Shown here: piece after piece, positions 76 to 29,343 of the stretch
Position numbering within the stretch: the first letter of the stretch is position 1
Layout of the letters: every line of letters starts with the position of its first letter
Assembly (NCBI GenBank): GCA_002269645.1
Contig: NIVC01002228.1
Location: 1 to 29,343, forward strand
DNA from: Macrostomum lignano
Lineage: Eukaryota
Reading direction: 5' to 3'
DNA length: 29,343 nucleotides
Made by a program: the position numbers and the translations under genes
The notes under the pieces: generated by a model
What the model was told of the DNA's origin: nothing
Databases searched by the model: none
The model's input: the letters and a program-made list of their open reading frames with translations, nothing else

Positions 76-195
76 CTCAATCAGACATTTCACAATTCAA
101 AAATTCAAGAAACCGCGTCTATTCGAAAACCAATAAATCTACTCGACTCTCTTAAGAAAAAAATCATGCATTTGATCAACTACTCAAGTACCCAC

Positions 196-1645
196 CGGAT
201 GCTTCAGACGCTCTCCTATCGGTTTTCTGCTGACCCTGTTTCAGTTTAGCTTTGTTAGCCGAAGCTGACTGAGCCCCCAGTACAGCTAGCAGGTCGCGTA
301 GATAAGTCAGAATCTCTGTGACAGTCGCGTCTGGCAGTGGTTTCTCTTCGATATCTTTGGCAGCCTGATTCAACCAGTCTAAGCACTGCCTAGCAACTGA
401 CCGATGCCCGGAGCCGCCATCGGCAAAGGCTAGTGTGACCAACACAGCTAAATAAGCCGGAAAATCTCCAGTACTATGCAGCATCCTAGCTGACGGAGTT
501 TTCAATGCTAATAACTCTTTTAATAATCTTCTAGGAAGCTTAGACGGTAGGCGACGCGACTTGGACGATTCTTTAACTAATAGTTCGGCAAACTGGGCCA
601 GCTCTGATAGTTTAGTAGAACAGTCAGCTGTGAGCTTATCCTCTAGCCAAGATTGAATCATTTTATCGCTAACATCAGCAGCATTGTCGGCTAGAGATTT
701 GCACAGGGCGGTTAACGGATGCTCCGGTGGGAAGCCGGAGGAGTCCTCCGAGCTGCCAGACTCGCTGCCAGATGGCAAGGCGTGCAATCTAGTTAATAGA
801 CGATTGAAAAAAGCCAAGGAATCCTGCGAGCCGAATAGTACAGCAGCTAGGCTGTCCGGTAACTGTTGAAATGTTGACTCTAGTAGTTTGACAGCGGAGC
901 TATTGTTAGACGACAGCGTTGAGGTCATAAGAGCGATAGTGTCTCGTTGCATGGCCTTCCAAATAGGATGATTTCTAGCTTCAACAGGCCAGGCGCTATG
1001 GCTAGCATGTGGATCAGTGAACAGATCGTGCAGCAGATTCGATAGGCAATGCAGCAACAGCAAGTCGTTGCCAGAGTCGCCGCCTATTAAAGAGAGCGCA
1101 GCCTCGTGAATTGGTCGATAGGCGTAGCCGAGACGAATAGCGGCTAGTCTGGGCACGCCGCCAACCTTGGTTAGTACCGACTGAGTTGATGGCCACCAAT
1201 GCTGCAGAGAGCGTAACAGACGGCCAAGGCTACAAAGCAGACGTTTATAAGACAGACAGGCTGGGCCAGTCGCCGAGGACTGAGCCAAGTGCAGCAGCAC
1301 AGTCTGCTCCATCAGCGAGTGGGCCGGCGTACTACCAGACTGCTGCTGACAGCCTCTACCGTCTAAAGCATCGTAGACGTCCATGTTCCGCCGAATGTGC
1401 TCGGGTAGACAAGCGGAAGAGTCCTTGAACCCGCCTGGGCCGGACAATATAGCCAACAATCGGCGGCATAATTGCAATTCGTAATCGGCTAAGCCGCAAT
1501 GCTGACTATCTGTCTGCACTAGCCAATCAATTATGGCTTGGCCGCACAATTCCGCAATGTCTATAAGCGGCTGACGCAATCGATTAGCGCAGGCAAGCAC
1601 GCTGGCTGGCGTGTCAGCCGACGACAGCTTGGCGAGTGCAACCAC
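196..1645 (-). CDS. UBR4: UBR4 exon 5
   Basis: Lies within ORF 176-1672. Acceptor ctccag|GTG at 1646/1645, donor G|gtgggt at 196/195. Motifs LSYKRLLCSLGRLLRSLQHW, LCKSLADNAADVSDKMIQSWL, DFPAYLAVLVTLAFADGGSGHRSVARQCLDWL and EILTYLRDLLAVL align by memory with human UBR4 LKHTLLSLVRLTGDLIVW, LCGSLAQLACVEPVRLQAWL, GFPELMVVMATLASAGQGAGHLQLHNAAVDWL and HIMSYLADVTNAL. Confidence 0.85.
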
Positions 1646-1745
1646 CTGGAGAATGTGGGGACGAATTTGCAATTATCTGGCTACCAATTGGCTCAGAGCA
1701 GTCACGTGACAAGTTAAACGCACTAACTAATGAGAATGAGATTTT

Positions 1746-2079
1746 TTGATTACAGACGAGTTTACCGCAGAAGTTTTGGCACCCTGGCGCACTTTAAGCG
1801 CATTCTGCCGACTCCCTGAGCAGGCACACAAGCGCGCGGATATGTACGCAGTCATGAGCACGGGCACACACTCACACAGGAGTGTACAGCGGCCCAAACT
1901 TTATTTTATCGTTAGGCATGTACACTTCACAGTGCCTTGGGAGTTGGCCCTCAAGGCCGTTAATTGCACAAGCAGAGCCAAGCCGAGATTCCAATTCAGC
2001 CCCAACTTAAAGTGACTGCACTTGGAATCGAGCCTGGGCCGCTGGCACATCAGAGCGTCGCGCAGGCCCCCTTAGCCCT
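1746..2079 (-). mobile_element. Probable tRNA-derived SINE in UBR4 intron 4
   Basis: The minus strand has a B-box-like GGCTCGATTCC about 45 nt into the insert, ends in CTGTAATCAA, and is flanked by a candidate 7-bp TSD AAAATCT (2080-2086 and 1739-1745). It is more GC-rich than the other introns. No clear A box. Confidence 0.5.
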
Positions 2080-2091
2080 AGATTTTCGAAC

Positions 2092-5000
2092 CTGTGGCGT
2101 GCAAGTTTCGAAAATCTTGACATCAAAAGTACAAACCTTTCCACCCGAAGCTGACACCAGCCGACGAGACGAGCTGGCGGTCGATTCCGAGTCGTCGCCG
2201 CCTTCGCCGCCAGATCTTAGATCGGAGAAAATCGCCGACAGGCAAGCAACCGCGGCGTCTAACATAGCAACTGGTAGAGGATTTCCACAGCTACTATTAT
2301 TAGTAAATTCGCCAAATTTTACATCCTTAAAATAGCTTTCAACATAGGCAGTCAGGGCGGCCAGAGTGCCGCAGGCGGATAATTTCTCTTCAAATAGGGC
2401 GTCGATCCAAGCCTGACCTGTAGATTTGGCCAGATTAGCGAACACCTGTCGCCTGGCAGTGAAATAGCGACTATTTAGCTGGGCAACGCAGTAGAGATCG
2501 AATCTGTCAGCTAGAATATCACCGCTAGGCGGCTCAAGTCCGCCGGAGTCGCAGGTGCGAAGAAACCAACCAGATGGCGGCAGCAGGTTCAATAGTCGAT
2601 TAGCGGCGCGCCAATGATATTCGAGGGCGCGCATCGAATCGGGTCGATAGTCGGCCGTACTATTATTTGACAGAGCGTTAACACGCCAGGTTAGGCGTAG
2701 CAAGCCTAAACAGGCCGAATAGATCTGATCGTAAGTATCCGGGTTAGACATGAGACAGTCTAGCGCTAGATTATCCGGCTTACTAACTGAAGGCGCCGGG
2801 ACTGGCGGCAGTTCGTAATAAAGCAACCGATTTGCCAAATCTTCGTCCGAGGCCACGGCGGCCAGTGTTCCACACGAGGCAGAGTCGGCGGCTGTAGCAG
2901 CGGCAACAGTCGCCTGCGAACTGGTTGGCCTAAGAAATTGGCCAAAGAATGAATACTTCAACTGTCGCATCAAATTGTCTGGCGGATCGTAATAATACTG
3001 CACAAACGACGCCATCAGTAGGCAGAGACGACTAATTGGCAACGGATTTAACAGCTGCGTCGGTTTCTTCGCACCGACGATACCAACTGGCAGAAGAGAT
3101 TAACGGTTAAATTCAGCGCCTCTCGACGCTGTTGTCGGGCAAAGAACAATAGTTGCATCAGTTGGGCAACCTCCGGCCCGAGATCCGAGGCGCCGCTACC
3201 GCTAGATGTCAATTGATTCGGCCAGGTGTACAATAGTTCGGCATTTCTAGCTAGCCAACCGGTGCTTAAACTGGCAAACAGTCTCAGCCAGAGACTATCC
3301 AGCAATTTGCGATCCTCCGCCCCTGTAGATCTGCCAGCTTCTAGGCGAAGAAATATCACTTGAACTGCAACAGACAGAGAGCGCCAACTTGAGCGCAACG
3401 GTAACGGCTGGTTCGATGCATCAATAGGAAAGCCAACAGCGGCGGACAGACTGCTGCGAAACTGATCCGTCTGACCCGTCGGGCACTCAGTCAGCAACGA
3501 GTGCAGGCAGCGGTGAAAAGCTACTGACGCTGAGCTCAGAGCCGACTGCAGCGAATTTGATAGACCATTTGGCCAAGCATCGAAATTCGATAATATGCCA
3601 GCAATTGTGGCTGGCGATAGAGGCTGCGGCTTCTGAGCCTGCTGAACAGGCGATAGACAAGCGATTAGGCGACAGAGTTTTTCTACAACTAGCAACAGTT
3701 CGGAGGGCTGAGGCTGCGCTAGTGTCACACTTTGCTGCTGTGGCTGCTTCTGTTGCTGCTGTTGCGACGATTTCTGCTTCTGCTGTTGTTCATTCGTGGC
3801 TTCTTCAAAAACGTTGCCAAACAATAGGCCGCCAGTTGAGTCGCTATCGTCAGACGAGGCGGACGAATCGCCGGCAGATGAAGACGATGAAGATGAAGGA
3901 GGCTGAGCGGAGACGCTACCGCTAGACAGAGGCACGGCAAGGCGCTGCTGCTGCTGGCGCGGCTGCGGCGCCTGCAACTGTTGGCTCGCAGTTTCAAGCG
4001 CCGAGCGCAGATACAGATCCAACAGTTCCAACAGGCACTGGCAAGAAGCCACATTGGCTAATAACCCGCGCAATCTCTCGGGCGAATGATAAGCGTCTAG
4101 CGGACGAAGGTCAGCCACCGATGACGAAGCGGAAGATTCTGCTGAACTGGCTCCGGTCAGCAGCAGTGACGGACTGTCTAGCAGAGCTTTTAACGACCGC
4201 GAGACGGCTAAAAGACCCGCTGGACCTAGAAGCAGCTGGTGCTGCTGAGTTTGCTGGGTCTGGCGCCCTAGCATAAACTGCACGGCCCCATTTAAGCCTA
4301 GGGCGCCGCAGGCGAAGCGGAGATTGCGCCTAGCAAACACAGCGCCATCTCCATCGGCGGCGCTAACAGACGACGGCTCTAAAAGTCGGTCGACAATTCG
4401 CCAGGCGGCTGAGATCAAAGCGACTGAGTCTGCGGTAGCTTGACTCGTTGACGCCGAAGATTCTTCTTGAGCACTAGAAGCCGTTTGTTGTTGCTGAGGG
4501 GAATCGGGCCGGCCAGCCCAGGCGGTCAGGGCGGCAAACTGGGCTGCGATGGCCAATTCTATCAGCTGTACAGAAACGGCGCCGCCGGCGCTAACGGCGC
4601 CAATTGCCACGCCGAGCGACACGATTCGATCTACCAAGTCAAGCTCGATTAGAAGCTGCTTGGCTGGCAAACTAGCAGCCGCTTTCGAAGCCGCTTTGGT
4701 AGTAGCCGACGAGGACGACGCTGTCGAGAAGAAGCTGACTGCAACGGTGCCGCCGTCCGATAAGCAGTTTAGTCGGCTTTTTGCGCACTCCAGCAGGCGT
4801 TCGACAACGCCTAGGCTGTACGCGACAGCGCGACAGCGAGCTAAAACAGCGGCTCGAACAGTCGGATTAGCGTCATCAGCGTATTCAAAATTCGCGGCAA
4901 CCTCCTCCGATGTGGTTTTAGCCGCAGTGGACTTGGCAGTGGCAGCGGTTTCGTCATCAGCTATTGGCTCGTTGAGGAATTCCTCAATGGCGTTGGCGTA

Positions 5001-5192
5001 CACTCGAGTGTCGCGATCCAGTCGGCCAGTCAAATTCGGCCAGGTCAAAGCGGCCGCCGCAGTCTCAGGCAGAGGCCCCGACGTTGCCGACGAGGAAGTT
5101 GAAGCGATGACGGATTTCGCTGCAGTCAGATCGTCGGCTGATAACCCGCCAACGCCGCGGCACAGTAAGTTAAGCGTAGCAACAACATCCGC
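2092..5192 (-). CDS. UBR4: UBR4 exon 4 (3.1 kb; ORFs 3048-5048 and 2050-3042 joined by a one-base frameshift near 3065)
   Basis: Acceptor caacag|GCG at 5193/5192, donor CAG|gttcg at 2092/2091 (phase 0 to exon 5). Motifs SSDDSDSTGGLLFGNVFEE, DLGPEVAQLMQLLFF, YYYDPPDNLMRQL, YDQIYSACLGLL, ALEYHWRAANRLLNLLPPS and MLDAAVACL parallel the UBR4 N-terminal alpha-solenoid region. Confidence 0.88.
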
Positions 5193-6827: not shown

Positions 6828-8129
6828 CCGGGTGTCCGGATTGAACGGAAACGCTGCTGATTTTTTGAATATTTTTTGCAATTTCTCAGCAAGACAAGCA
6901 GCTGTACCATTTATTTTTGACAACAGTAAACAGGAAGGTGTCAGCATTGTTCTCATTCAAAATGGCCGCCATTGGCCGCGATCACGCGCTCCAGCCTCTT
7001 CCTGAACTGCTGGCACACCTTCCTCACATAGTTGGTGTCCATTCTCTCCCACGCCAGCCGAACAGCAGCCTGCAGCGCTTCCACACTGCTGTGGCAGGAT
7101 CTGCAGGCCTCGCTCTCCACACGCTGCCAGATTGAGAAGTCCAGCGGATTCAGGTCCGGACTGGAGGGCGGCCACATCGTCTTCGGCCAGAAGTTCGCCA
7201 TGTTGTCTGCCAAGAACTGCTGGGTTGTGGCCGCTGTGTGAGCCGGAGCACCGTCCTGCTGCCACACGTACTGTCCGTCAGGGTACTGCTGATGCAGCCA
7301 AGGCAGCACGTGCTGCTGCAGCAGCTGCTGGTAGCATGCAGCATTCACTTTGGTGCCTGGGTTGATGAAAATGGGGGGACACCTCCGTCCATCACTCGCA
7401 ACGACGCCCAGCATCATGATGGAGGCCGGGTGCTTAGACTTCATACTGTACTTCACGTGGGCAGGTGTGTCCGCGCTGCTGGCGGCGCTGATGTAGCGAG
7501 TGTTGCGCCTGTTCACGGCTTGGTCACAGGTGAACAGTTTCTCGTCGCTGAACACGCGCACCAGCGAGCCGTGGTTCTTCACCCACGTGAGCAACTGCCT
7601 GCAACGCTTGAGACGCGATACCTTCTGCTTCGAAGTGATGAGGTTCTTCGGCACCACCACTCTGGACACCATGCCGAGGTCTTCTTTGACGAGCTCCGAC
7701 ATTGTCGTCTTGCTCATGTCGTGCTCACGTGCCAGTCGGCGAATCGACCTTCGGGGATTTCGGTTGACCTTCGCCCGGACGGCTGCGACGGTCTTCTTCG
7801 TCCTTTTTGTCCTCGGACGACCACCCCCATGTCTTTTGGTGACATCTCCTGTGTCGTTCAGCAGCTTCCTCACAGTGAAAATCCTCTTTCTGCTCACATT
7901 GAGCACTTCTCTGATGTCGCTAGTTGACTTTCCAGCGCAAAGTAATTCAGCGATTGCTCGTCTTTGAGCCTCGTGCTCAGCCATGGTTAGGAATAAAGCT
8001 GCAAGAGTGGATGTATTAAATTCTGTGATTTCTGCTGGTTCTGACACCCATGCAAAATTTTGAATTTTGCGAAAGATTACGTAATTAACGACGTTTTAAG
8101 CAGCGTTTCCGTTCAATCCGGACACCCGG
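6828..8129 (-). mobile_element. Tc1/mariner-superfamily DD37D (maT) DNA transposon, apparently intact
   Basis: Perfect 31-bp TIRs CCGGGTGTCCGGATTGAACGGAAACGCTGCT at both ends, TA flanks (TATA on each side), one uninterrupted transposase ORF. Confidence 0.95.
6953..7984 (-). CDS. DD37D mariner-type transposase (343 aa from the ATG of MAEHEAQ)
   Basis: N-terminal HTH region (GGGRPRT), catalytic motifs VFSDEKLF, WQQDGAPAH and SPDLNPLDFSIW. I count 37 residues between the second and third Asp. Confidence 0.95.
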   Translation of the reverse strand: MAEHEAQRRAIAELLCAGKSTSDIREVLNVSRKRIFTVRKLLNDTGDVTKRHGGGRPRTKRTKKTVAAVRAKVNRNPRRSIRRLAREHDMSKTTMSELVKEDLGMVSRVVVPKNLITSKQKVSRLKRCRQLLTWVKNHGSLVRVFSDEKLFTCDQAVNRRNTRYISAASSADTPAHVKYSMKSKHPASIMMLGVVASDGRRCPPIFINPGTKVNAACYQQLLQQHVLPWLHQQYPDGQYVWQQDGAPAHTAATTQQFLADNMANFWPKTMWPPSSPDLNPLDFSIWQRVESEACRSCHSSVEALQAAVRLAWERMDTNYVRKVCQQFRKRLERVIAANGGHFE

Positions 8130-14800: not shown

Positions 14801-15172
14801 CAGTGACGTGTGACTATCAGTGACGTGTGACTATCAGTGACGTGTGACTATCAGTGACGTGTGACTATCAGTGACTTGACTAATAGTGACTTGACTATCC
14901 GTGACGTGTGACTATCAGTGACGTGTGACTATCAGTGAAACTTGACTATCAGTGACGTGTGACTATCAGTGACGTGTGACTATCAGTGACGTGTGACTAT
15001 CAGTGACGTGTGACTATCAGTGAAACTTGACTATCAGTGACGTGTGACTATCAGTGACTTGACTATCAGTGACGTTGACTATCAGTGACGTGTGACTATC
15101 AGTGACGTGTGACTATCAGTGACTGTGACTATTAGTGAAACTTGACTATCCGTGACGTGTGACTGCCAGTGA
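14801..15172. repeat. 17-bp minisatellite CAGTGACGTGTGACTAT, about 22 copies
   Basis: Directly visible tandem array with shortened variants (CAGTGACTTGACTAT, CAGTGAAACTTGACTAT). Followed by AACCTAACC-type low-complexity sequence at about 15225-15295. Confidence 0.95.
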
Positions 15173-16229
15173 CAACTGCCGGCAATTCGATTATTTCATA
15201 TTGACTGCCAACTCTATCCCCATCACTAACCTTACCTGCAACCTAACCTACCAAACCTAAACCACATAAAATAAACCCTAATCCTGACTAACCTAAATAA
15301 TCGAGAGTCAAATGACTTGTATCCAGTATTTCAACCAACTGTTCTTGACTTGCGCTGATTCCACTTTATATAATTTAGAAGATACCATGATTTCGGATTT
15401 TTATCATGTTTGATTCATTCGTATAGTGTAGCTGTACATGTACCAGATACAAACCGGCACCAGACACACTACAATACACTCGGCCCGGGTCCATATCTGA
15501 TGGAACTGCCTTTAAGGGATCCCCTCTCAAGCCATGGCTGATTTTCTAGACATCGCTACCTCTAGGGAAAATTCCGCAGTTAAGAATGCCCATTTTGCCT
15601 CTCCGATGTTGAGAATACGAATCACTTCATCTGTGAATGCCCCCCAGCCTTTACTCAGGACAGGCTCACCTACCTCGGCCCAAACCCGGACGTTTACAGG
15701 CCCGGGAATTTCTGCAGTTCGCTATTTAAAGGCTAAGGGCTACTGGGCGAGCGACCATTTAACTCGCGTCGGCACCAGCACCACCGGATCTCCCGACACC
15801 GAAACACAAGCTGCCCAGAGACCTCTGAAGCTAAGTCAAGTGACGAAAGTAAGTCAAGTCTTTAAATTGGGAGGGGGGTGATTTCGCTTCAAAACGCTTT
15901 CATCTACTGAACAGTTTATTCTTCAAAATAATCCGTGCATAAATTATCGGATTACGGTGCAGACGCAGAGTGACTACTGCAGTAAATCAGTGAACTGAAC
16001 GCTACATGTATAACAAAATTAACAAATATAAGTATAAAAATTTAACGTAAATAAAATTATTTTAATAATATATAAAGCCAGTAAATATGCACGTCAGTTT
16101 CATTTAAATATTAAAGTATTGACTTGAAGTTTTCAAACACATTAACATTTCTCAAACAATGTGTGTACTTAGGCTTGTGGATTGTACATGTACTTCAGAG
16201 ATCATTAGATTCTAGCTCATTCTAGCTCT

Positions 16230-16291: not shown

Positions 16292-19200
16292 TCAGAAAGC
16301 GGTCATTATGTCCGCCTCGTTGGGGCCATGTACCTCGGAATCCTTGAGTTCATTGCTACCAGCTGCTGAGCAACCCTCGGATGCGCTGGGCCTCTGTCGC
16401 AATTTCGCTGCGAGCCTTTGGCTAATGTAGATGAGCAGCTCGACCACCTCGCAGACAGTCAGAATCGAGACGCCTGACCAGAGACCCAAGGCGCCTGTAG
16501 ATTGAAAAAAATCGTTTACGATTCTAAGTGGGAATTCGATTGTCTACGTCTCTACGTAGCAAACAATTCGAATTAAATTTTTGCGATCGATACCGAAGTG
16601 AAATCATAGTGTATAGGTCACTCTGAAGTAGCTTTTACAACCCCTAGGAACTGGCCTGTACTGGACTCTATAGGTGCAAGTTTTGTTTTAGTTCTCCCGA
16701 CTTGCTTCCGCTTTGAGATCGCATTGGACTGAAACTCAACGCTGCAAAAGCTTTGGGAAAATTTTCAGAAACTTTTTGACGAAGTTTCGGTGCATTTTAT
16801 TGCTTTTAATTTTTACCACACCGTGATCTGATTCGAAACGCATGCTCGTAAAATATGAACGATTTCCTCCTATGTCTGCAACGAGATTCTTGGTAGGGTA
16901 GGCCTCCTCTTCGGTGATCTCCTGACCTTCGGAGGTCCACGCCTGAACTGTCAGTCTGGCCAGGCGGTTCTGCAGCGACTCGAGCTCTTTTTCGAAGCCC
17001 AGAATGTCCTTGGCGCTCTGATTGGCAAAAGGCACCCCGGTGAGGCTAAGTGACTTCAAGTACGCTTGGTAGAAATTGGCTACACCTCTAAGACCGCTAA
17101 CGCTGGTCCGGTAGCCGTAGTTGCTTGCAAGCTTCTGCAATAGCAGAGTGGATCTGGCAGTCTTCAAGTTAGGCCACGGATAAGTGACGTAACGGACACT
17201 GTAGCCGTCTGTCCGACACGGAGACTGACAGCGCTTCATCGCCTCAAACTCGTACTGGTTTATCCGCGATACCTGCTCATTGTACCGTATCTCAAGATCG
17301 ATAGACAAGTTGCCGATGTCCTTGGCGTCGAAACAGTAGCTGTACTGGTCGAATAAGTCCACCTTGACTGGCAGAATCGACGGTAAACAGTTGCAGTTTT
17401 CGATGAACTGCTGTACAATGTACGAATTGATGCAATCCTCTCTACCGGAGACGTTGAACTGTCGCTCAGTGGCAGTCAGAACGCTGGATAAACGTTAAGT
17501 TATGACCAGTGAAATATCATGCACTTTTATCTGTTCTACGCTCGTACCTTCGATGCTAGCTAAAGCTCAACGCAATTATTTCTCAAGCACTGACCTTGAA
17601 CTGTTCGGCAGTAGCAGCATCGCCCGGAGTCTTCTGATCATCTCAGACCAATTCTCAGAGTGGCCGACCAACTCTGCAGCTTCCTCCATTCTGAAGAATG
17701 TTTAATTCAGTTCAAAGGAGCCATTGAAACCTTCTGCTTTAATTTGCCGTAGGCAATTTTCAAGAAAATTTAATGTCACTGAAGAAAGTTACCTACTTTA
17801 GGTCTTCGTTTGACATGGACTTCTTCCATGACGGCAGTCGATATACAATTGGCTCGGTGGTCTCTAGGCACGGCCTCGATGCAGTTGAGAGTCTGGAGTA
17901 TCTTTCGAACCTGAGCTGCACGTCCATGCGTTGGGAGGCGGCCACGTCGATGCCCTTGGACGACCAGGGGAACGAGTCTTCCGGAACAATGATCGCCTAG
18001 GAGTGGAAGGTTGTGGTAATAGTTTTGGATTTACGTGGGGTTTCTGCACTAGACTTCTTATTTTACAATCATTTGAGACATTTGACAATTTCATTTGAAT
18101 TTTTTAAAATGTTTCGCATTTTGGCACAAAATAAAAGAAACATGCTTTCTAAGTCTTTCCAAGGTAGGTTCAGTCAAGTCTGCATTGACTTTCTGGATGT
18201 AACTTTTTTGTTACCTCAGGGTTAGCTTAGCTCTCGCTTTTGAGTTTTTAGTGTACAGTTTTGTGTGTTTTTGTCTTTGACTTCAGTCATTTTTATGATT
18301 CGGTGCAAAAATTTTTAATGACTACACCTCGATCAACTTTCCTTGTGTGCCTTTACTGATTCGCAAATGATATCTCATTGTGCACTTTCACATCCGGATT
18401 GTGATTCCTCTATCAAAAACACACCGCTTACCTTGAAAGCCAGGTCGCTGATCTCCAAGCTCATACCGTTATGAAACGCACTGGTCATTTCGGGCATGTC
18501 CTCGACTGTTTTCCCTTTAGAGTCTGTGGAGTCGGTGAAGTACGTTATTGACAGCTGACTCCCTGCTAGCTGGGTGCTCGACATGTTGGCGATGAAGCTC
18601 TGCTTGAGAAACTGGTGGCACATTCCCAGCTGCGGATGGTCGATATTGACGAAGTGCTCCTTGGTGCATTTCTGGCCAGCGAAGGTGCAGTCGGCCAGGC
18701 CGATGCTGAGGTCGTTGCTGAACTGCCTGGCGAGCAGGTGGCTGCCGACCGAGTCAGTGAAGACGCCTCTGACGCTGGTTTCAGCAGCTGAAATTTTTGT
18801 GCCGACAGGCAATGCGTGAAGCTCAGAATTTATAGTTTTAACAACTTTTAGGCTCCGACTTACAACAAGTAGGAATTGTGCAGCGTTCGAATGCCATCTC
18901 AAAAAACTGAGTTTGAAAAATTGGTACCGACATTGTGTGCAGCAGAGATGGATCGGCAAAGCAGACGGGAGAATTGGAGATTAACACTGGGTGCCGTCTG
19001 AAAGTGATGTTAAAAATGAGATGCAGTCGTTCTACAGCTGCTTGCAAAAAATGAGGCTAGTGAAACTCACGTGAAGGTGCCGTTCTCAGTTTCCGCTAGG
19101 TCAATAACTATGCTCACTGGACGACAAAAGTTGTCGCTGGTGTTCCCAATACGGTCGGGGGTTTGAATCTTTAGTCGCAGCAGTTTTTCAACAAAGCGAA

Positions 19201-22152
19201 CACCTGAAATGCAATATTTATCAACTATAGTTCGGCGCATTGGGTTCACTTCACGTGCATGTTGATTTAAAAACATCCATTCAGACGAATGAAAAGTTGC
19301 TGTTTTAAGATAGTGGGTGTGTGCTTTCTTGCTAATAAGATCGTAGCTAGATAGTCTTACTCCATCCACTCCCTAGGTGTGAAACTAAAACGGATACCAA
19401 AAATAGCACCAGCAAATCACTTGAACAATCGGCCTTCAAAATGTTTCTTTCCCTAGTTCGTTAGTGCCATTTTTGGTTTGCTAGTTTCCAACCGAGTACA
19501 AAAAATTGAAGAAATTGTTTTCCCTAGCAGAGATTAGAAAGTTCAGAAACGTACAAACCTTTATTGAGTTTCATCTTCATCTGCACGTTCTCCACGCTAC
19601 TCCAAGGCAAACAGTCCCGGCCCGACTCTGTCCAGTTCGTCCGACCAGTGTACACCACATTCGCTCCGGCATTTTTGCTCACGGCGCAGTCGAACTCTTT
19701 AGTAGCGGCTGTAATGTGCTGCGTTAGTTTGTTAGATAGTTCGCAACAGGCCACCCGCAGAGAATCGCCTAAGCTACCGAAGTTTCTTTCACCAGCCCTA
19801 AATTGATGTCTCAGTGAACGGAATGAATACTAGCTTCTTCGACTGCTTTGGCTGTAATCAACACCATTGACTCACCGCAGTAAGGGACGTCGCACAAGCC
19901 AGCGTTTAGTCTTTCAGAGTCCATGAAGAAGCAGTAGGGTCCGCCTGAATAAGCTTCCAATTGACCAAACCTTCCAATATGCATTGGTTTGTCTTCTAAA
20001 AGAAGTCACGGATTAAAGCTGATGGAGAAACTAATTAGCTTTATTAATTAGAGTATATTCAGCACACAAACCAACATCCCGGATGATCATAACAGCAGCG
20101 GTCCTGTCTGATCCGCATGGCTCCGTTTTGCTGTTGCCGCACTGCCTGTCGCAGCTGGTCCAGCTCCCGTCGGCCAGAGTGGCAGCGGCCTCGGAGCTGC
20201 CGCAGAGGCAGTCGCCGCGGTTCAGCAGCGCTGCAAACGGAGCGTTGAACTTGTCGCAGCACTGGGCGCACGGCTCAAAGGCCTCCAGGCCTCCGCTGTA
20301 GCACGTGATGTTGAAAGCCGTGTCCGCTGTCACTGGGAAGCAGCCAATTATTTCCCGTCTGGGTCCTGTGTGAGCGCATGGAGTGCGTCAGTTCAAGAGT
20401 GAGAGAGTCAGTCAGTCAGTCAGTCAGTCAGTCAGTCAGTCAGTCAGTCAGTCAGTCAGTCAGTCAGTCAGTCAGTCAGTCAGTCAGTCAGTCAGTCAGT
20501 CAGTCAGCCAGTCAGTCAGCCAGTCAGTCAGTCAGTCAGTCAGTCAGTCAGTCAGTCAGTCAGCCAGTCAGTCAGCCAGTCAGTCAGTCAGTCAGTCAGT
20601 CAGTCAGTCAGTCAGTCAGTCAGTCAGTCAGTCAGTCAGCCAGTCAGTCAGTCAGTCAGTCAGTCAGTCAGTCAGTCAGTCAGTCAGTCAGTCAGTCAGT
20701 CAGTCAGTCAGTCAGTCAGTCAGTCAGTCAGTCAGTCAGTCAGTCAGTCAGTCAGTCAGTCAGTCAGTCAGTCAGTCAGTCAGTCAGTCAGTCAGTCAGT
20801 CAGTCAGTCAGTCAGTCAGTCAGTCAGTCAGTCAGTCAGTCAGTCAGTCAGTCAGTCAGTCAGTCAGTCAGTCAGTCAGTCAGTCAGTCAGTCAGTCAGT
20901 CACTCACTCACTCACTCGCTAAGTCAGTCACTTACGAGTTGCAATTGGGAGAAACTCTGTCAGCGGCAAACCCGGAGGTAAGCGGCACCTGGACTCAGTC
21001 TCTGAGAAGTTGAGTTTCATCAGCAAGCCACCCAGTACTTCAGCATTCGAGCTCCCTCTCTGCAGCATGCGTGCTGCATCATTCCATCGCATGCACTGCT
21101 TGTAGATCACGTAGGGCTGTACAGGTGGCTTAACCGAATAGTTTCCAAGTGTTTTTGAATCGGAAGGATCAATCGTAATACTAGATGGCCCATAGACAAC
21201 TGCATAGCTTGCGTTTCCAAGGTAGTTACTTCCGTCGAGACTTCTCCTACAGTCGGAGCTTTTATTTTTTGCTGCAAAAAATTGTTTTGACTCGCATTTT
21301 TGCGGGAAAATCTATTTTCACGCATTTATAATGCTGGAAATACATCGCTTAAAATTAATTTCAAGAATTTATAGTCACTGCTGAGTTCGTCTCGTAGAAA
21401 AGCAGCTGTAAGTACGAGTTATTCAATGTATAAACCGACTTTTAGTCTCAGTACTGTAGCTTCTACCGGGGTTATGGGGATCTTTAGATGCTTACAGTCT
21501 TGCAGGTGCCAAGTGGATATCTAAGCTTAGTCGTGGAGGTGTCAGGTCGATCTCTAAAGCTAAGTAAATCTCGAAGGACCCGAGGTGAAGCTTAACTACA
21601 CAAATTCGCAGGTTGTAGAAGGAAGCAAACATAAATTTAGAACTTTCAAGGCAGCTTACACTTTACTAGCAGTTTCAGTTGGCTCATCACGGCTGATTCA
21701 GTTTGCTCCAATGCAATCAAAAACGCTTGCGTCGGCTTGTTAAAAAAAAGAGTTTCCGATTTAGACAAATCAAAGTCGTAAAGTTTGATTTTTTCGCTTG
21801 TGTTACTCTTAGAGCCGAGCTCTACATTGTAAATATCCGATGTCGACAGCATCGGAACAATTCTACTCATGGTGACGGCGTGAGTCGGGCAGATGTACAC
21901 ATCCGGGAACTGGTACGGCAGAGTGGACACCGTTATTGTTGTTAACACCGGAGCCTGCTGGTACCTGTCGAACAGGGTGTACAGGTGGTAGCCGAACCCG
22001 CTGTAGGTAGCCAGCAGAAAAGTGAGCCATAGTGACCTGCCGATGAAGCTGGACTGCTCAGAGAATCTGCCCAGTCCGTGAGCACTTGTGTAGCTGCAGA
22101 ACTGCTTGACAGGTGAGCTCAGCTCATGCTGGTCAGCGGGTTCGCTGCTCAT
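16292..22152 (-). CDS. DEG/ENaC (amiloride-sensitive/ASIC-like) channel subunit with kringle-WSC-kringle insertion, ~12 exons, ~1100 aa
   Basis: Exons 21660-22152, 20936-21271, 20072-20365, 19876-19944, 19559-19768, 19071-~19340/19375, 18864-18997, 18432-18787, 17797-17996, 17595-17690, 16867-17483 and 16292-16494. Hallmarks: TSAHG, TM1 (RSLWLTFLL), FPDVYIC, DCTFAGQKC...HPQLGMCHQF, thumb cysteines CINS...CNC...CQSPC, YPWP, ADIGG-ALGLWSGVSILTVCE (TM2 with GxS filter). All junctions are phase-consistent except exon 5/6 (acceptor unresolved), and the penultimate donor reads GA. Confidence 0.9.
18864..19768 (-). other. Kringle domain 2 of the DEG/ENaC protein (exons 5-7)
   Basis: DCAVSKNAGANVVYTGRTNWTESGRDCLPW ... 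DNFCRP ... SPVCF ... ERCTIPTC gives the six-cysteine kringle pattern, with a long insertion between C2 and C3. Confidence 0.8.
20072..20365 (-). other. WSC domain (single symmetric phase 1-1 exon)
   Basis: IIGCF ... CAQCC ... FAALLNRGDCLCG ... SCDRQCGNSKTEPCGS fits the WSC cysteine pattern (GCF...C..C...A...G..C.CG...C...C.G....CG). Confidence 0.85.
20407..20930. repeat. (TCAG)n microsatellite, about 125 units, in intron 2 of DEG/ENaC gene 1
   Basis: Directly visible, with occasional CCAG variants and a TCAC tail. Confidence 0.98.
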
Positions 22153-24190: not shown

Positions 24191-24966
24191 ATTTTTTCAA
24201 TTAATAAGCGCGGCTGTTTGACGAGATGCACTATAGCCATAGTTGTTCGACAAGACAAATAGCTTTTTCTCCCACTACTCGCTTTCCTCATACTTCCTCA
24301 CTACTCGATTTCTTGCAAGACGCAAGCAAAATCAGCACTCACAGTGTTGTCTATGGTCAAACTAAGCCACACAACTCAGTCGTCTATGGGTAAAACAACT
24401 CTTAAAACAGCCAATTGAAGCATGATAAAAAGTATGGAATAATGACCGCGACAAAAGTGTGAATAATGGCCGCAAAAGTGTGGAATAATGATAGATTGTG
24501 TATATGGTTTTGGAGGTAGACAATGATAAAATTTTCACGAGTGGCGAAGCCACTGAGTGACTAAAATTTATCATTGTCTATGACAAAACCATATACACAA
24601 ACACATTGTCTCATGAATGTATTTTTAGAAGCCTAAAATAATGACTCCTAAGCATGGAATAATGAGCGTACAGCATGACACAATGACTGCGCGCTGAGTT
24701 AAAAGTATAGATACAATGCACTTGTATAGTATGCAACTTCGTTGAATAATGGCCATAGACACTCGTGCGCTACGATACTATACAATCTACCATTAAATGA
24801 TTTATTGGTCCCGGTATAGAAGTAGTTGTACCATAGACTATTGATTCCTTGCTGCCAGGGCGCCCATTAAAGGTCAATAAAATAAGCAATTGGATTTTAT
24901 ATGATAAAAGCGTGCATTAAATGTATTATCATTTGTTAACCATGTCGTAGTATTTCGCAGAAACAT

Positions 24967-26280
24967 TAGATAGCGCTCTACCGTTCGTGTGCTTTTTTGG
25001 CCGGTGATCTTGCAAATGTCAGCATTTAAGAAGCTATCATCGGCGAGTTCTTTCACAACTGTTGGACGCACGCAGTGGGCGGTGAACCGACGACTAAGTC
25101 CAGCAGCTTGTGAAATGGTCGACATGAGACTCGCCAAGGTGTTGACACCGACAGGCTGTTTAGCACAGTACCAATTAGACGTTTTCCAGTTGGAAACTTT
25201 TGGCTTCAAAAAGAAAGGCGTGCCTGGAGTAGCACCAGAGCTGCTGCTAGAAATCGACTCGCTTTGCTTACGTAGATACATCTTTAGTGCCTCGACTGGG
25301 CACTTTTCTGCGATTGAGACCATCACCGCGTTCTTGTAGTCATCGCACGCTTCTCGGTTGAGGCTGTTGCCTACATTCTTAACTTTGCCAAGCCTAAGCC
25401 GCACAACCTCCGCTCCGTCGGGCCTCTTCTCAAAGATAAAGCTGTTCTCACTGATTCAGCGACGCCACTCGCGTCCCGGATTTCCAAAGTAATAGATGCA
25501 GTTGTAATATACTTCGTGCAACAACGCCGTCGGATATTCTCTGCTGAAGTAAGCGGCCAGTTTGCGCAAATCGTCCTCCTCCAGGTCTTCAAAATGTTTA
25601 GATCTGCCACCTGCACTGATGAAACTACGAGCCAGTGCTTTCAAGGTCGCATTGGCATTAGAGAACTCTCTGTCGGAAATGATATTCATTCGCCTGGTCT
25701 TCATCAGATGTCGGTACAATGCCGCTCGCATACAAATCAGAGTAGACGATGCCGGAAGGTTGCCGTCACGCTTCCTGAAGGTTCCATAGAACAACCGTAG
25801 TGCAGATGCAATGGCCTCAGCGGAATTGGTTTGCAGATCGACACGGGCCTAAAAAGTTACGACGTTCAAAAGCAATACAAGAATTGACGAAAAGACCTAT
25901 AGAAAATCTGAATTCAAAGCATGTAGAATACAAAGATTAACTGAAACCACAGGATATCTGATTTCGAAGCAACTAACCTCGGGATGTTCATCCATGAACG
26001 TGTTCAGCTTTTTTTACATAACATTCGGCTTGCTGTCTGCTACTGGCGTTCTCTGCTGAGCGTTCCAACTCGGAAATCGCAGCCTCCAGCCTGTTTAAAT
26101 CAGGCTCGGTGCTCATCAGCTCCTCCAGCATGGCGTCATCGATATCTTCGGGCAAAGCATAGTTGGTGTCCAGCGGTCCATTATCAAGCTCCTCCTGCGT
26201 CCGATCGCGAGCATGTTGTTCGAGTGTTTTATCCGACTCGACAGAGGACGGGCCGCTAACCATCTCGTTGGGAAATCTAA
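24967..26280 (-). pseudogene. Crypton/DUF3504-like tyrosine recombinase, disrupted
   Basis: LRLFYGTFRKRDG...STLICMRAALYRHL, YFGNPGRE, FFLKP...NWY...PVGVNTL...AAGL...FTAHCVR...KITGQKS...ERY. Intron 25849-25977 (GAG|gttagt...tttag|GCC). Lesions: extra base in the T7 run at 26009-26015 and in-frame TGA at 25456-25458. Confidence 0.85.
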
Positions 26281-28251: not shown

Positions 28252-29135
28252 ATGAGCATGGAACCCGCTGACCAGCATGAGCTGAGCTCACCTGTCAAGC
28301 AGTTCTGCAGCTACACAAGTGCTCACGGACTGGGCAGATTCTCTGAGCAGTCCAGCTTCATCGGCAGGTCACTATGGCTCACTTTTCTGTTGGCTACCTA
28401 CAGCGGGTTCGGCTACCACCTGTACACCCTGTTCGACAGGTACCAGCAGGCTCCGGTGTTAACAACGATAACGGTGTCCACTCTGCCGTACCAGTTCCCG
28501 GATGTGTACATCTGCCCGACTCACGCCGTCACCATGAGTAGAATTGTTCCAATGCTTTCTCAACGCGACATTTATAATGTTGAGCACGTTTCGAAAAGCA
28601 GCAATCCCAGCGAAAAGATTAAACTGTACGAATTTGACTTGTCGACACCCAGACGCTTCTATCTAAACATGCCGACATATGCTTTTCTGCGTGCCTTAGA
28701 AGTTACGGAGCAGACAATGATAGATCAGCTACAGCCTTCAAAAAACGGTAGGGATTCTGCCAGATAATCTAGAAACCTTAAATCCATATACTCAAAATGA
28801 CTCATATTCACTTCAGCCAAAAGAGGCTATGCCTGCCGGACCAGCCTAAATGGTGAGGAGTACATTGGAAACGCAAGCTCGGCAGCCGTCTATGGGTCAC
28901 TAGCTTTTCTTTGGAGTCTATCGACTACAGAAACACAGCTGGGCCACCTGTACCGCCTTACATAGCCTACAGCAGTGCATGCGATGGAATGATGCAGCAC
29001 GCATGCTGCAGAGAGGAAGCTCGAATGCTGAAGTACTGGGTGGCTTGCTGATAAAACTCAACTTCTCAGAGACTGAGTCCAGGTGCCGCTCACCTCCGGG
29101 TTTGCCGCTGACAGCGTTTCTCCCAATTGCAACTC
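28252..29135 (+). CDS. Second DEG/ENaC-kringle paralog, exons 1-2 (continues off the right edge; exon 2 frameshifted in this sequence)
   Basis: Exon 1 is 28252-28747 (donor G|gtaggg) and is nearly identical to copy 1 over HG/TM1/FPDVYIC. Exon 2 is 28817-29135 (ttcag|CC ... C|gtaagt), kringle start ACRTSLNGEEYIG; it is 319 nt and appears to lack two single bases. Confidence 0.8.
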
Positions 29136-29343
29136 GTAAGTGACTGACTTAGCGAGTGAGTGAGTGAGTAAGTGGAGTGAGTAAGTGAGTGAGTAAGTGA
29201 GTGAGTTCAAGAGTGAGTGAGTTCAAGAGTGAGTGAGTTCAAGAGTGAGTGAGTTCAAGAGTGAGTGAGTTCAAGAGTGAGTGAGTTAAGAGTGAGTGAG
29301 TTCAAGAGTGAATGAGTTAAGAGTGAGTGAGTTCAAGAGTGCT
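29136..29343. repeat. (GAGT)n microsatellite grading into a 16-bp unit GAGTTCAAGAGTGAGT, intron 2 of DEG/ENaC copy 2
   Basis: Directly visible; truncated by the window end. Confidence 0.9.

What the first reader, a model, noticed from the sequence alone, without database searches (positions are those of the whole stretch)
19876..21271. WSC domain nested inside a kringle by exon shuffling
Kringle 1 cysteines 1-3 (DCRR, QCMRW, RCRLP) are in exon 2 and cysteines 4-6 (GPYCF, LCDVP, PYC) are in exon 4. The WSC domain is exactly one symmetric phase 1-1 exon between them, and exons 2-5 are all phase 1-1, the established signature of module shuffling. This is domain insertion into a kringle loop rather than the serial kringle-WSC order of Kremen. 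Because the exon is symmetric, skipping it would regenerate a contiguous kringle, giving a possible splice switch of ligand specificity.
Basis: partly seen in the sequence, partly recalled or inferred. Interest (0 to 1): 0.72.

Follow-up and report, generated by a model that had tools for sequence, protein, structure and literature searches.

The report
WSC domain nested inside a kringle
A flatworm (Macrostomum lignano) sodium-channel gene of the DEG/ENaC family carries, in its outer loop, a kringle module split in two by a complete WSC module encoded on one exon; this domain-within-domain design is real and kept in all diverged copies of the gene, but nothing shows it acts as a splice switch.

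Summary
Exon coordinates and phases are exactly as stated (ex2 21271-20936, ex3 20365-20072, ex4 19944-19876, ex5 19708-19559, all phase 1-1).

- **WSC:** exon 3 alone passes the Pfam WSC threshold, but only just (29.0 bits against 27.8).
- **Kringle:** the flanks fail the Pfam Kringle model (13 bits). With the WSC removed, a profile-profile comparison with 129 canonical kringles gives 98.3% probability (E 1.5e-14), end to end, with all six Cys aligned. Exon 2 covers kringle columns 8-68 and exon 4 covers 69-91.

- The gene is a complete 12-exon DEG/ENaC channel of Macrostomum lignano.
- The kringle[WSC]-kringle cassette is itself nested in the channel's extracellular domain between phase-1 introns.
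- Exon 4 probably starts at 19995, which adds a linker conserved in every paralog.
- The same exon and phase layout holds in three RNA-seq-based paralog models at 34-45% identity.
- The architecture turned up only in this species.

Exon shuffling fits but is unproven: no donor gene or empty site was found. The splice-switch idea has no support: every deposited model that spans the site keeps the WSC exon. Structure prediction was weak to moderate.

Verdict: a real, undescribed variant of known parts, of moderate interest.

The parts
21660..22152 (-). Exon 1 (phase 0-1): start codon, DEG/ENaC N-terminus with the HG motif (YTSAHGLGR), TM1, and FPDVYICP after TM1
   Evidence: Pfam ASC 61 bits on residues 18-151; splice mapping
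20936..21271 (-). Exon 2 (336 nt, phase 1-1): N-terminal part of kringle 1 with Cys1-3 (DCRR, QCMRW, RCRLP). It includes a family-specific insertion of about 30 residues between Cys1 and Cys2, and the linker LPLTEFLPIATR.
   Evidence: hhalign of this part alone against kringle columns 8-68: probability 94.7%, E 6e-8
20366..20935 (-). Intron 2 (phase 1), mostly an (ACTG)n microsatellite of about 131 units at 20406-20930
20072..20365 (-). Exon 3 (294 nt, phase 1-1): the complete WSC domain with 10 Cys
   Evidence: Pfam WSC 29.0 bits alone, threshold 27.8. It is one phase 1-1 exon in paralogs too. Paralog P0007 matches the yeast Wsc1 structure 7pz2, E 2e-6
19945..19995 (-). 51 nt read as intron in the deposited model but probably coding: the conserved C-side linker (E)DKPMHIGRFGQLEAYS, reached from an upstream acceptor ttttag|AA at 19995
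   Evidence: Open in frame. Matches xxP[LMV]x[IV]..F..L....GPYCF in all paralogs, whose exon 4 is 123 nt
19876..19944 (-). Exon 4 as annotated (69 nt, phase 1-1): C-terminal part of kringle 1 with Cys4-6 (GPYCFF, LCDVPYC)
   Evidence: hhalign of this part alone against kringle columns 69-91: probability 96.3%, E 1.5e-9
19559..19708 (-). Exon 5 (150 nt, phase 1-1): N-terminal part of kringle 2 (Cys1-2)
   Evidence: Pfam Kringle positions 8-35, E 0.002. Multi-kringle proteins match the ex4+ex5 part of the family profile
19071..19203 (-). Exon 6 (phase 1-2): middle of kringle 2, with NFCRP (Cys3)
   Evidence: Custom kringle model on kringle 2: 36.8 bits
18864..18997 (-). Exon 7 (phase 2-1): C-terminal part of kringle 2 (PVCF ... 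RCTIPTC). The cassette ends here at a phase-1 intron.
16292..18787 (-). Exons 8-12 (18787-18423, 17996-17797, 17690-17595, 17483-16861, 16494-16292): the rest of the DEG/ENaC extracellular domain, TM2 with GLWSGVSILT, and the stop codon. The boundaries of exons 9-12 are guided by homology and approximate.
   Evidence: Pfam ASC 134.7 bits on the 1048-aa model. Colinear with the RNA-seq-based paralog P0164, 50% identity over 1029 residues
28252..29137 (+). Head-to-head paralog (protein P0002): exons 1 and 2, carrying the N-terminal part of its own kringle 1. The window ends in its intron 2, which also starts with tetranucleotide repeats.

Best explanation
The region encodes part of the extracellular loop of a complete DEG/ENaC-family channel subunit of Macrostomum lignano (12 exons, about 1048 aa).

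**What is shown**
- At the variable 'finger' position, the channel's extracellular domain is interrupted by a cassette of two divergent kringles.
- The first kringle is itself interrupted, in the hairpin between Cys3 (CRxPPG) and Cys4 (GPYCF), by a complete WSC domain with conserved linkers on both sides.
- This layout, its exon structure and its phases are conserved in every paralog examined.

**What is inferred**
- In a kringle, all three disulfides (C1-C6, C2-C4, C3-C5; established knowledge) join a Cys in exon 2 to a Cys in exon 4. The two halves must therefore fold together around the base of the WSC domain.
- The WSC is then displayed from the loop that in plasminogen-type kringles carries the acidic residues of the lysine-binding site. 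Here that stretch reads PPGLP, so kringle 1 is probably a scaffold rather than a lysine binder.
- The WSC exon is constitutive.
- The arrangement most likely arose when a phase 1-1 WSC exon was inserted into a phase-1 intron of a kringle. This happened once, before the family diversified, inside a kringle cassette that is itself bounded by phase-1 introns in the channel gene.
- Functionally, the kringle[WSC]-kringle module is probably a binding or tethering head for glycan, matrix or a ligand. It sits on the part of the channel that controls gating in ASIC, ENaC and FaNaC channels.
For: **Gene model and phases:**. The model matches P0001 at 100% and is colinear with the RNA-seq-based P0164.

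**DEG/ENaC identity:** Pfam ASC 134.7 bits. The closest solved relatives are FaNaC, ASIC5 and ENaC. The insert falls between FaNaC residues about 155 and 207.

**Split kringle**
- hhalign 98.3%, E 1.5e-14, with clean controls and complementary halves.
- A custom kringle model scores higher when the WSC is removed, in all six lineages: 16.6 to 25.6 bits for the window gene and 20-27 to 31-39 bits for paralogs.
- MAFFT puts six Cys, Tyr, Trp and Arg in invariant columns and opens one gap at the WSC.

**WSC:**

**Conservation of the layout**
- All diverged paralogs show the nested layout.
- The K1N / WSC / K1C / K2N exons are phase 1-1 in P0005, P0007 and P0157. Those models derive from an RNA-seq transcriptome (PMC5730564).

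**Structure prediction:** an AlphaFold2 model built with a kringle-containing alignment gave pLDDT 88-96 on both kringle halves and pTM 0.65. Its only notable PDB matches are Kremen1 (kringle plus WSC; E 1.8e-3, probability 0.87-0.91) and yeast Wsc1.
Against: - Pfam's Kringle model does not recognise kringle 1 (13.1 bits against a threshold of 34.3).
- A 3-sequence profile found nothing in PDB sequences.
- With only family sequences, AlphaFold2 was poor (pLDDT 57) and Foldseek was not significant.
- The better model used an alignment containing canonical kringles, so its kringle fold is partly imposed.
- Between Cys2 and Cys3 the models predict helices, which a canonical kringle lacks.
- The window gene's own transcript was not seen; P0001 is a predicted model.
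- No function, ligand or expression data exist.
- No donor gene or empty site supports the exon-insertion step, and ostracod kringle exons have no intron at that position.
Confidence: 0.8

Rival explanations
1. Splice switch: the symmetric WSC exon is regulated and optional. Skipping it restores a plain kringle with a different ligand specificity.
For: - Skipping is in frame, because the exon is phase 1-1.
- The exact ex2+ex4 product still matches the kringle profile end to end (94.6%, E 6.7e-8).
- The deposited model uses a different exon 4 acceptor from the one the paralogs imply, so some splice variation at this spot is possible.
Against: - Every deposited family model that spans the site includes the WSC exon, including five RNA-seq-based ones.
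- The WSC and its linkers are kept in lineages down to 34% identity.
- The WSC is about 91% identical between the two paralogs in this window, while kringle 2 is 34-58%.
- The models lacking an exon drop exon 4, which would break the kringle. P0003 is demonstrably mispredicted.
- Being in frame is a general property of all class 1-1 exons.
Confidence: 0.08
2. Two remnants rather than an insertion: the ancestor was kringle-WSC-kringle in series. The first kringle lost its C-terminal third and the second lost its N-terminal two thirds, leaving pieces that only look like one split kringle.
For: - Kremen shows that kringle and WSC can be serial neighbours (PMC5014086).
- The gene does contain a further kringle downstream.
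- No empty-site ancestor was found.
Against: - The two pieces cover kringle profile columns 8-68 and 69-91, with no overlap and no missing column.
- Each piece keeps exactly three invariant Cys. By the known kringle pairing, these can only be satisfied by the other piece.
- This scenario needs two exactly complementary deletions; insertion needs one event.
Confidence: 0.07
3. Annotation artefact or chance: the flanks are merely Cys-rich sequence, or exon 3 belongs to another transcript, so the nested architecture is a gene-prediction error of the kind common in metazoan databases.
For: - Pfam Kringle fails on kringle 1.
- P0001, P0002 and P0003 come from a predicted gene set that contains clear errors.
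- Published work warns that gene-prediction errors distort the apparent domain architectures of metazoan proteins (PMC3927609, listed).
Against: - Independent RNA-seq-based models of four paralogs have the same order, exons and phases.
- The reading frame is open through all junctions.
- Profile and alignment evidence holds against negative controls.
Confidence: 0.03

Closest known systems
Kremen1/2 (kringle-WSC-CUB Dickkopf co-receptors)
   Same: They are the closest characterised proteins that combine a kringle and a WSC domain (recalled; Kremen was not among the top 150 library hits, and no other protein there had both domains), and the two domains pack tightly in the crystal structure (PMC5014086). 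They are the best PDB match of the predicted model (5fwt, E 1.8e-3).
   Different: In Kremen the domains are in series, followed by a CUB domain and a single membrane anchor. Here the WSC lies inside the kringle's Cys3-Cys4 loop, there is no CUB, and the host is an ion channel. This gene is not a Kremen family member.
DEG/ENaC channels (FaNaC, ASIC, ENaC, MEC-4)
   Same: Pfam ASC 134.7 bits, the HG motif, two TM helices and the TM2 G-x-S motif. The closest solved relatives are FaNaC and ASIC5. The finger region is the variable, gating-relevant part of this family (recalled knowledge).
   Different: The literature search found no described member with kringle or WSC modules. Here about 380 residues of mobile extracellular modules replace or extend the finger, bounded by phase-1 introns.
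Canonical kringles (plasminogen, tPA, HGF, invertebrate multi-kringle proteins)
   Same: Six Cys, Y-G, C-x-x-W, CRxP, P-[WY]-C-[FY] and C-x-[IV]-P-x-C all align. Both are class 1-1 modules.
   Different: - Kringle 1 is interrupted by 125-150 residues (WSC plus linkers).
- It carries an extra insertion of about 30 residues after Cys1.
- It lacks the acidic pair after CRNP (inferred from the alignment).
- It is predicted to be helical between Cys2 and Cys3.
- It scores below the Pfam threshold.
- The ostracod kringles closest in sequence are single exons.
Other nested extracellular modules (laminin L4 domain inside a laminin EGF-like module; integrin beta I domain inside the hybrid domain)
   Same: One folded domain is inserted in a loop of another small disulfide-rich or beta module. 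I recall these examples from memory; they were not tested here.
   Different: The domains are different. I know of no report of anything nested in a kringle.

Membership tests
Kringle (PF00051) | Score at or above the Pfam gathering threshold (34.3 bits) | tested here: not met
   ex2+ex4 fusion: 13.1 bits, covering only profile positions 57-79. Full protein: 16.7 bits, from kringle 2.
Kringle (PF00051) | End-to-end profile similarity to bona fide kringles, with six Cys and the signature motifs in register | tested here: met
   hhalign 98.3%, E 1.5e-14, columns 8-91; controls give 3.1% or less. Invariant C, Y, C, W, C, R, C, C, C in 50 sequences. The reference kringles score 205-300 bits on Pfam.
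Kringle (PF00051) | Triple-disulfide fold (C1-C6, C2-C4, C3-C5) | tested here: inconclusive
   AlphaFold2 with family sequences only: pLDDT 57. With kringles in the alignment: pLDDT 88-96 on both halves, but the fold is then partly imposed. No coordinates were available to measure Cys distances. Foldseek found no match at E <= 0.001.
WSC (PF01822) | Score at or above the Pfam gathering threshold (27.8 bits), and the Cys pattern | tested here: met
   Exon 3 alone: 29.0 bits, which is marginal; 23.5-25.1 bits in the context of longer spliced sequences, the exons 1-4 product and the full model. Paralogs: 39-41 bits. P0007 against yeast Wsc1 7pz2: E 2e-6. The eight canonical Cys are present, plus two family-specific ones.
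DEG/ENaC (PF00858 ASC) | ASC domain, HG motif, two TM helices, G-x-S in TM2 | tested here: met
   134.7 bits against a threshold of 23.6. AHGLGR, the TM1 stretch and GLWSGVSILT are read directly from the model. FaNaC, ASIC5 and ENaC are the best PDB sequence hits. Channel activity was not tested.
Kremen | Serial kringle-WSC-CUB ectodomain on a single-pass membrane protein | tested here: not met
   The WSC lies inside the kringle. There is no CUB hit. The host is a two-TM channel.
Class 1-1 module moved by exon shuffling | The domain coincides with an exon or exon set flanked by phase-1 introns | tested here: met
   The WSC is one phase 1-1 exon in the window gene and in P0005, P0007 and P0157. 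The whole kringle cassette (exons 2-7) is also bounded by phase-1 introns.
Class 1-1 module moved by exon shuffling | An identifiable donor gene, and a recipient with an empty phase-1 intron at the insertion site | tested here: not met
   - A whole-library search found the architecture only in M. lignano, and no protein among the top 150 hits outside the family has both domains.
- No insert-free close DEG/ENaC relative was retrieved.
- Ostracod kringle exons have no intron at the site.
- This is absence of evidence; sampling of flatworm genomes here was limited.

The most novel reading that the evidence does not exclude
A two-level nested head (WSC inside a kringle, kringle pair inside the channel's finger region) is a built-in tether or receptor for extracellular glycan or matrix. 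It would gate a DEG/ENaC channel directly, as a self-contained mechanosensor or ligand sensor. Splice choice at exon 3 or at the two exon 4 acceptors would tune it.
Probability: 0.15. Interest if true: 0.75.

Novelty: new variant of a known kind. Interest (0 to 1): 0.55.

Why it matters
**Domain evolution.** Mobile extracellular modules are normally strung in series. A class 1-1 module fixed inside another class 1-1 module, and that pair fixed inside a channel's ectodomain, is a clean and datable case of nested exon shuffling. It shows that the kringle's Cys3-Cys4 hairpin tolerates a whole domain.

**Ion channels.** This is a DEG/ENaC subfamily with recognisable binding modules at the position that controls gating in relatives. 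That gives a concrete handle on what opens otherwise orphan flatworm channels. The idea can be tested in M. lignano, where transgenesis is established (PMC5730564).

**Annotation.** Standard domain models miss the split kringle entirely.

Tried and rejected
- **Pfam Kringle** on the ex2+ex4 fusion and on exon 2 alone: below threshold or nothing.
- **hmmsearch of PDB sequences** with a 3-sequence WSC-deleted profile: no hit even at E 10.
- **AlphaFold2 with only six family sequences:** pLDDT 57, Foldseek not significant.
- **A mixed alignment of family, kringles and WSC fragments:** MAFFT misaligned the kringles onto the WSC, so it was discarded.
- **Search for an insert-free close DEG/ENaC relative** to show an empty site: only family members came back.
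- **Looking for an intron at the insertion point** in the closest canonical kringle gene (Darwinula stevensoni): none, each kringle is one exon.
- **Using P0002 and P0003, which lack exon 4, as evidence of alternative splicing:** rejected, because P0003 contains a frame-shifted exon 1 peptide and both are predicted models.
- **The high GC content of exon 3** (0.63) as a sign of foreign origin: exon 8 has a similar GC3, and paralog WSC exons are not GC-rich.
- **Literature search** for kringle or WSC in DEG/ENaC channels or in Macrostomum channels: nothing found.
Full report
**What the window is.** The sequence comes from the flatworm Macrostomum lignano. My spliced reading of exons 1-5 is 100% identical to UniRef A0A1I8HN37 (P0001), and every relative found is from that species.

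**Checking the observation**
- I required GT-AG introns that reproduce P0001. They are preceded by ex1 22152-21660 (phase 0-1) and followed by ex6 (1-2), ex7 (2-1) and ex8 (1-0).
- Exon 3 alone reaches the Pfam WSC threshold, narrowly: 29.0 bits against 27.8.
- Intron 2 is almost entirely an (ACTG)n microsatellite of about 131 units.

**What the gene is**
- Exon 1 is the N-terminus of a DEG/ENaC (amiloride-sensitive sodium channel) subunit (Pfam ASC).
- Extending the model by homology gives 12 exons and 1048 residues. It ends in a TM2 with GLWSGVSILT and scores 134.7 bits on Pfam ASC.
- It is colinear over 1029 residues with P0164, a complete paralog model from the RNA-seq-based NIVC01 annotation (PMC5730564).
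- The closest solved structures by sequence are FaNaC, ASIC5 and ENaC. The inserted region falls between FaNaC residues about 155 and 207, which is the finger region.
- The kringle[WSC]-kringle cassette (exons 2-7) is bounded by phase-1 introns inside the channel's extracellular domain. The nesting therefore has two levels.

**Is the split kringle real?** Pfam says no for kringle 1: 13.1 bits, C-terminal part only. A small profile also found nothing in PDB sequences. More sensitive tests say yes.
- A whole-library HMM search with the cassette profile retrieved multi-kringle proteins that match the exon 4 plus exon 5 segment. Pfam scores these at 205-300 bits as kringles.
- From them I took 129 canonical kringles.
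- The family kringle 1 with the WSC and linkers removed matches that profile end to end: hhalign 98.3%, E 1.5e-14, columns 8-91, all six Cys aligned.
- Controls were clean. The reversed alignment, ten column-shuffled alignments and the family WSC all give 3.1% or less.
- The exon 2 part alone matches columns 8-68 and the exon 4 part alone matches columns 69-91. These are exactly complementary.
- The window's exact ex2+ex4 product, as a single sequence, gives 94.6%, E 6.7e-8.
- A custom kringle HMM scores every lineage higher once the WSC is deleted.
- Unconstrained MAFFT of six family sequences with 44 kringles puts the six Cys, Tyr, Trp and Arg in invariant columns. It opens one gap of about 154 columns in every canonical kringle, between CRNPxx and PWC.
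- The known kringle disulfides are C1-C6, C2-C4 and C3-C5. Each therefore links exon 2 to exon 4, and each half keeps exactly three invariant Cys.

**Structure prediction**
- With only family sequences the model was poor (pLDDT 57). Foldseek listed kringles first but without significance.
- I then predicted paralog P0157 with kringles in the alignment. Both kringle halves reached pLDDT 88-96 (pTM 0.65).
- The only notable PDB matches of that model were Kremen1 (E 1.8e-3, probability 0.87-0.91) and yeast Wsc1.
- This is supportive only, because the alignment partly imposes the kringle fold and I could not inspect coordinates.

**Conservation**
- The nested order is present in all diverged family lineages, at 34-47% identity in this region.
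- Exact splice mapping of three RNA-seq-based paralog genes shows the same layout: K1N exon, one WSC exon (276-312 nt), a 123-nt K1C exon and the K2N exon, all phase 1-1, then phases 1-2 and 2-1. These are P0005 at L001, P0007 at L002 and P0157 at L003.
- All paralogs have a conserved linker of about 17 residues before GPYCF. The window encodes the same motif, in frame, just upstream of the annotated acceptor, behind a good acceptor at 19995.
- Exon 4 is therefore most likely 19995-19876, which leaves a 76-nt intron comparable to the 87-nt intron of P0005.

**Distribution.** In a library of 1.8 billion representative proteins, the full architecture was found only in M. lignano. Of the top 150 hits outside the family, 44 have kringles only, 94 have WSC only and none has both.

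**Origin**
- The phase pattern fits Patthy's rule that class 1-1 modules are inserted into pre-existing phase-1 introns (PMC3927616).
- I found no donor gene and no empty site. The closest canonical kringles, from the ostracod Darwinula stevensoni, are single exons with no intron at that point.
- Kringle 2 of the same gene has an enlarged Cys3-Cys4 loop with an intron in it, but in phase 2.
- I rate exon insertion as the most likely origin, at about 0.55, but unproven.

**Splice switch**
- Skipping exon 3 is in frame and would leave a kringle-like sequence.
- Every deposited model that spans the site keeps the WSC exon.
- The WSC is among the best conserved parts between the two paralogs in the window.
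- The models that drop an exon drop exon 4, and one of them is visibly mispredicted.
- If there is splice variation here, the two exon 4 acceptors are the more concrete candidate.

**Function (inferred)**
- The insertion sits where plasminogen-type kringles carry the acidic residues of the lysine-binding site, and that stretch reads PPGLP here. Kringle 1 is therefore probably a scaffold that presents the WSC.
- The whole head sits on the gating-relevant finger of the channel. This suggests a role in ligand, glycan or matrix binding.

**Literature.** Searches of the held library found no description of kringle or WSC modules in DEG/ENaC channels or in Macrostomum channels.

**Verdict.** The evolutionary mechanism is plausible and the splice-switch idea is unsupported. 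It is a new variant built from known parts, of moderate interest.

Noticed in passing
window 28252-29343 (+) versus 22159-20902 (-): A second copy of the channel gene (P0002) lies head to head about 6 kb away. DNA identity between the copies is a mosaic:
- 92.5% over the 5' part of exon 1
- 95% over the 3' part of exon 2, running 34 nt into intron 2
- much lower in between
At protein level the WSC is about 91% identical, but kringle 2 is only 34-58%. This could reflect gene conversion tracts or uneven constraint.
   Followed up: partly
window 20406-20930 and 29139-29343: Intron 2 of both paralogs begins with long tetranucleotide arrays at the same position: (ACTG) of about 131 units in one, and (AGTG)/16-mer repeats in the other.
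   Followed up: no
window 24874-25800 (-): ORFs between the two paralogs have weak DUF3504 and Phage_integrase (tyrosine recombinase) matches. This suggests a Crypton-like element or a gene derived from one.
   Followed up: partly
window 6953-8047 (-): An intact 364-aa ORF with HTH and DDE_3 transposase domains (Tc1/mariner-like). It is GC-rich (0.57) and embedded in AT-rich sequence (0.28-0.36).
   Followed up: partly
window 176-5048 (-): Large GC-rich ORFs with matches to the N-terminal region of the E3 ligase UBR4, probably exons of a UBR4-like gene that runs off the window.
   Followed up: partly
window 14801-15173: A 17-nt tandem repeat (CAGTGACGTGTGACTAT) of about 22 copies, roughly 1.1 kb downstream of the channel gene's stop codon at 16292.
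   Followed up: no
window 19071-19203 and 18864-18997 (kringle 2): Kringle 2 also has an enlarged Cys3-Cys4 loop (about 30 residues against about 11) with a phase-2 intron in it, and a long Cys4-Cys5 spacing. The same loop is therefore expanded in both kringles of the cassette.
   Followed up: partly
protein P0003 (UniRef A0A1I8HMR1), a near-identical copy of the window gene: This deposited model contains the peptide NDNGVHSAVPVPGC, which is a frame-shifted reading of exon 1 (compare ORF 21863-22030). It also lacks exon 4. It is a mispredicted database entry.
   Followed up: yes
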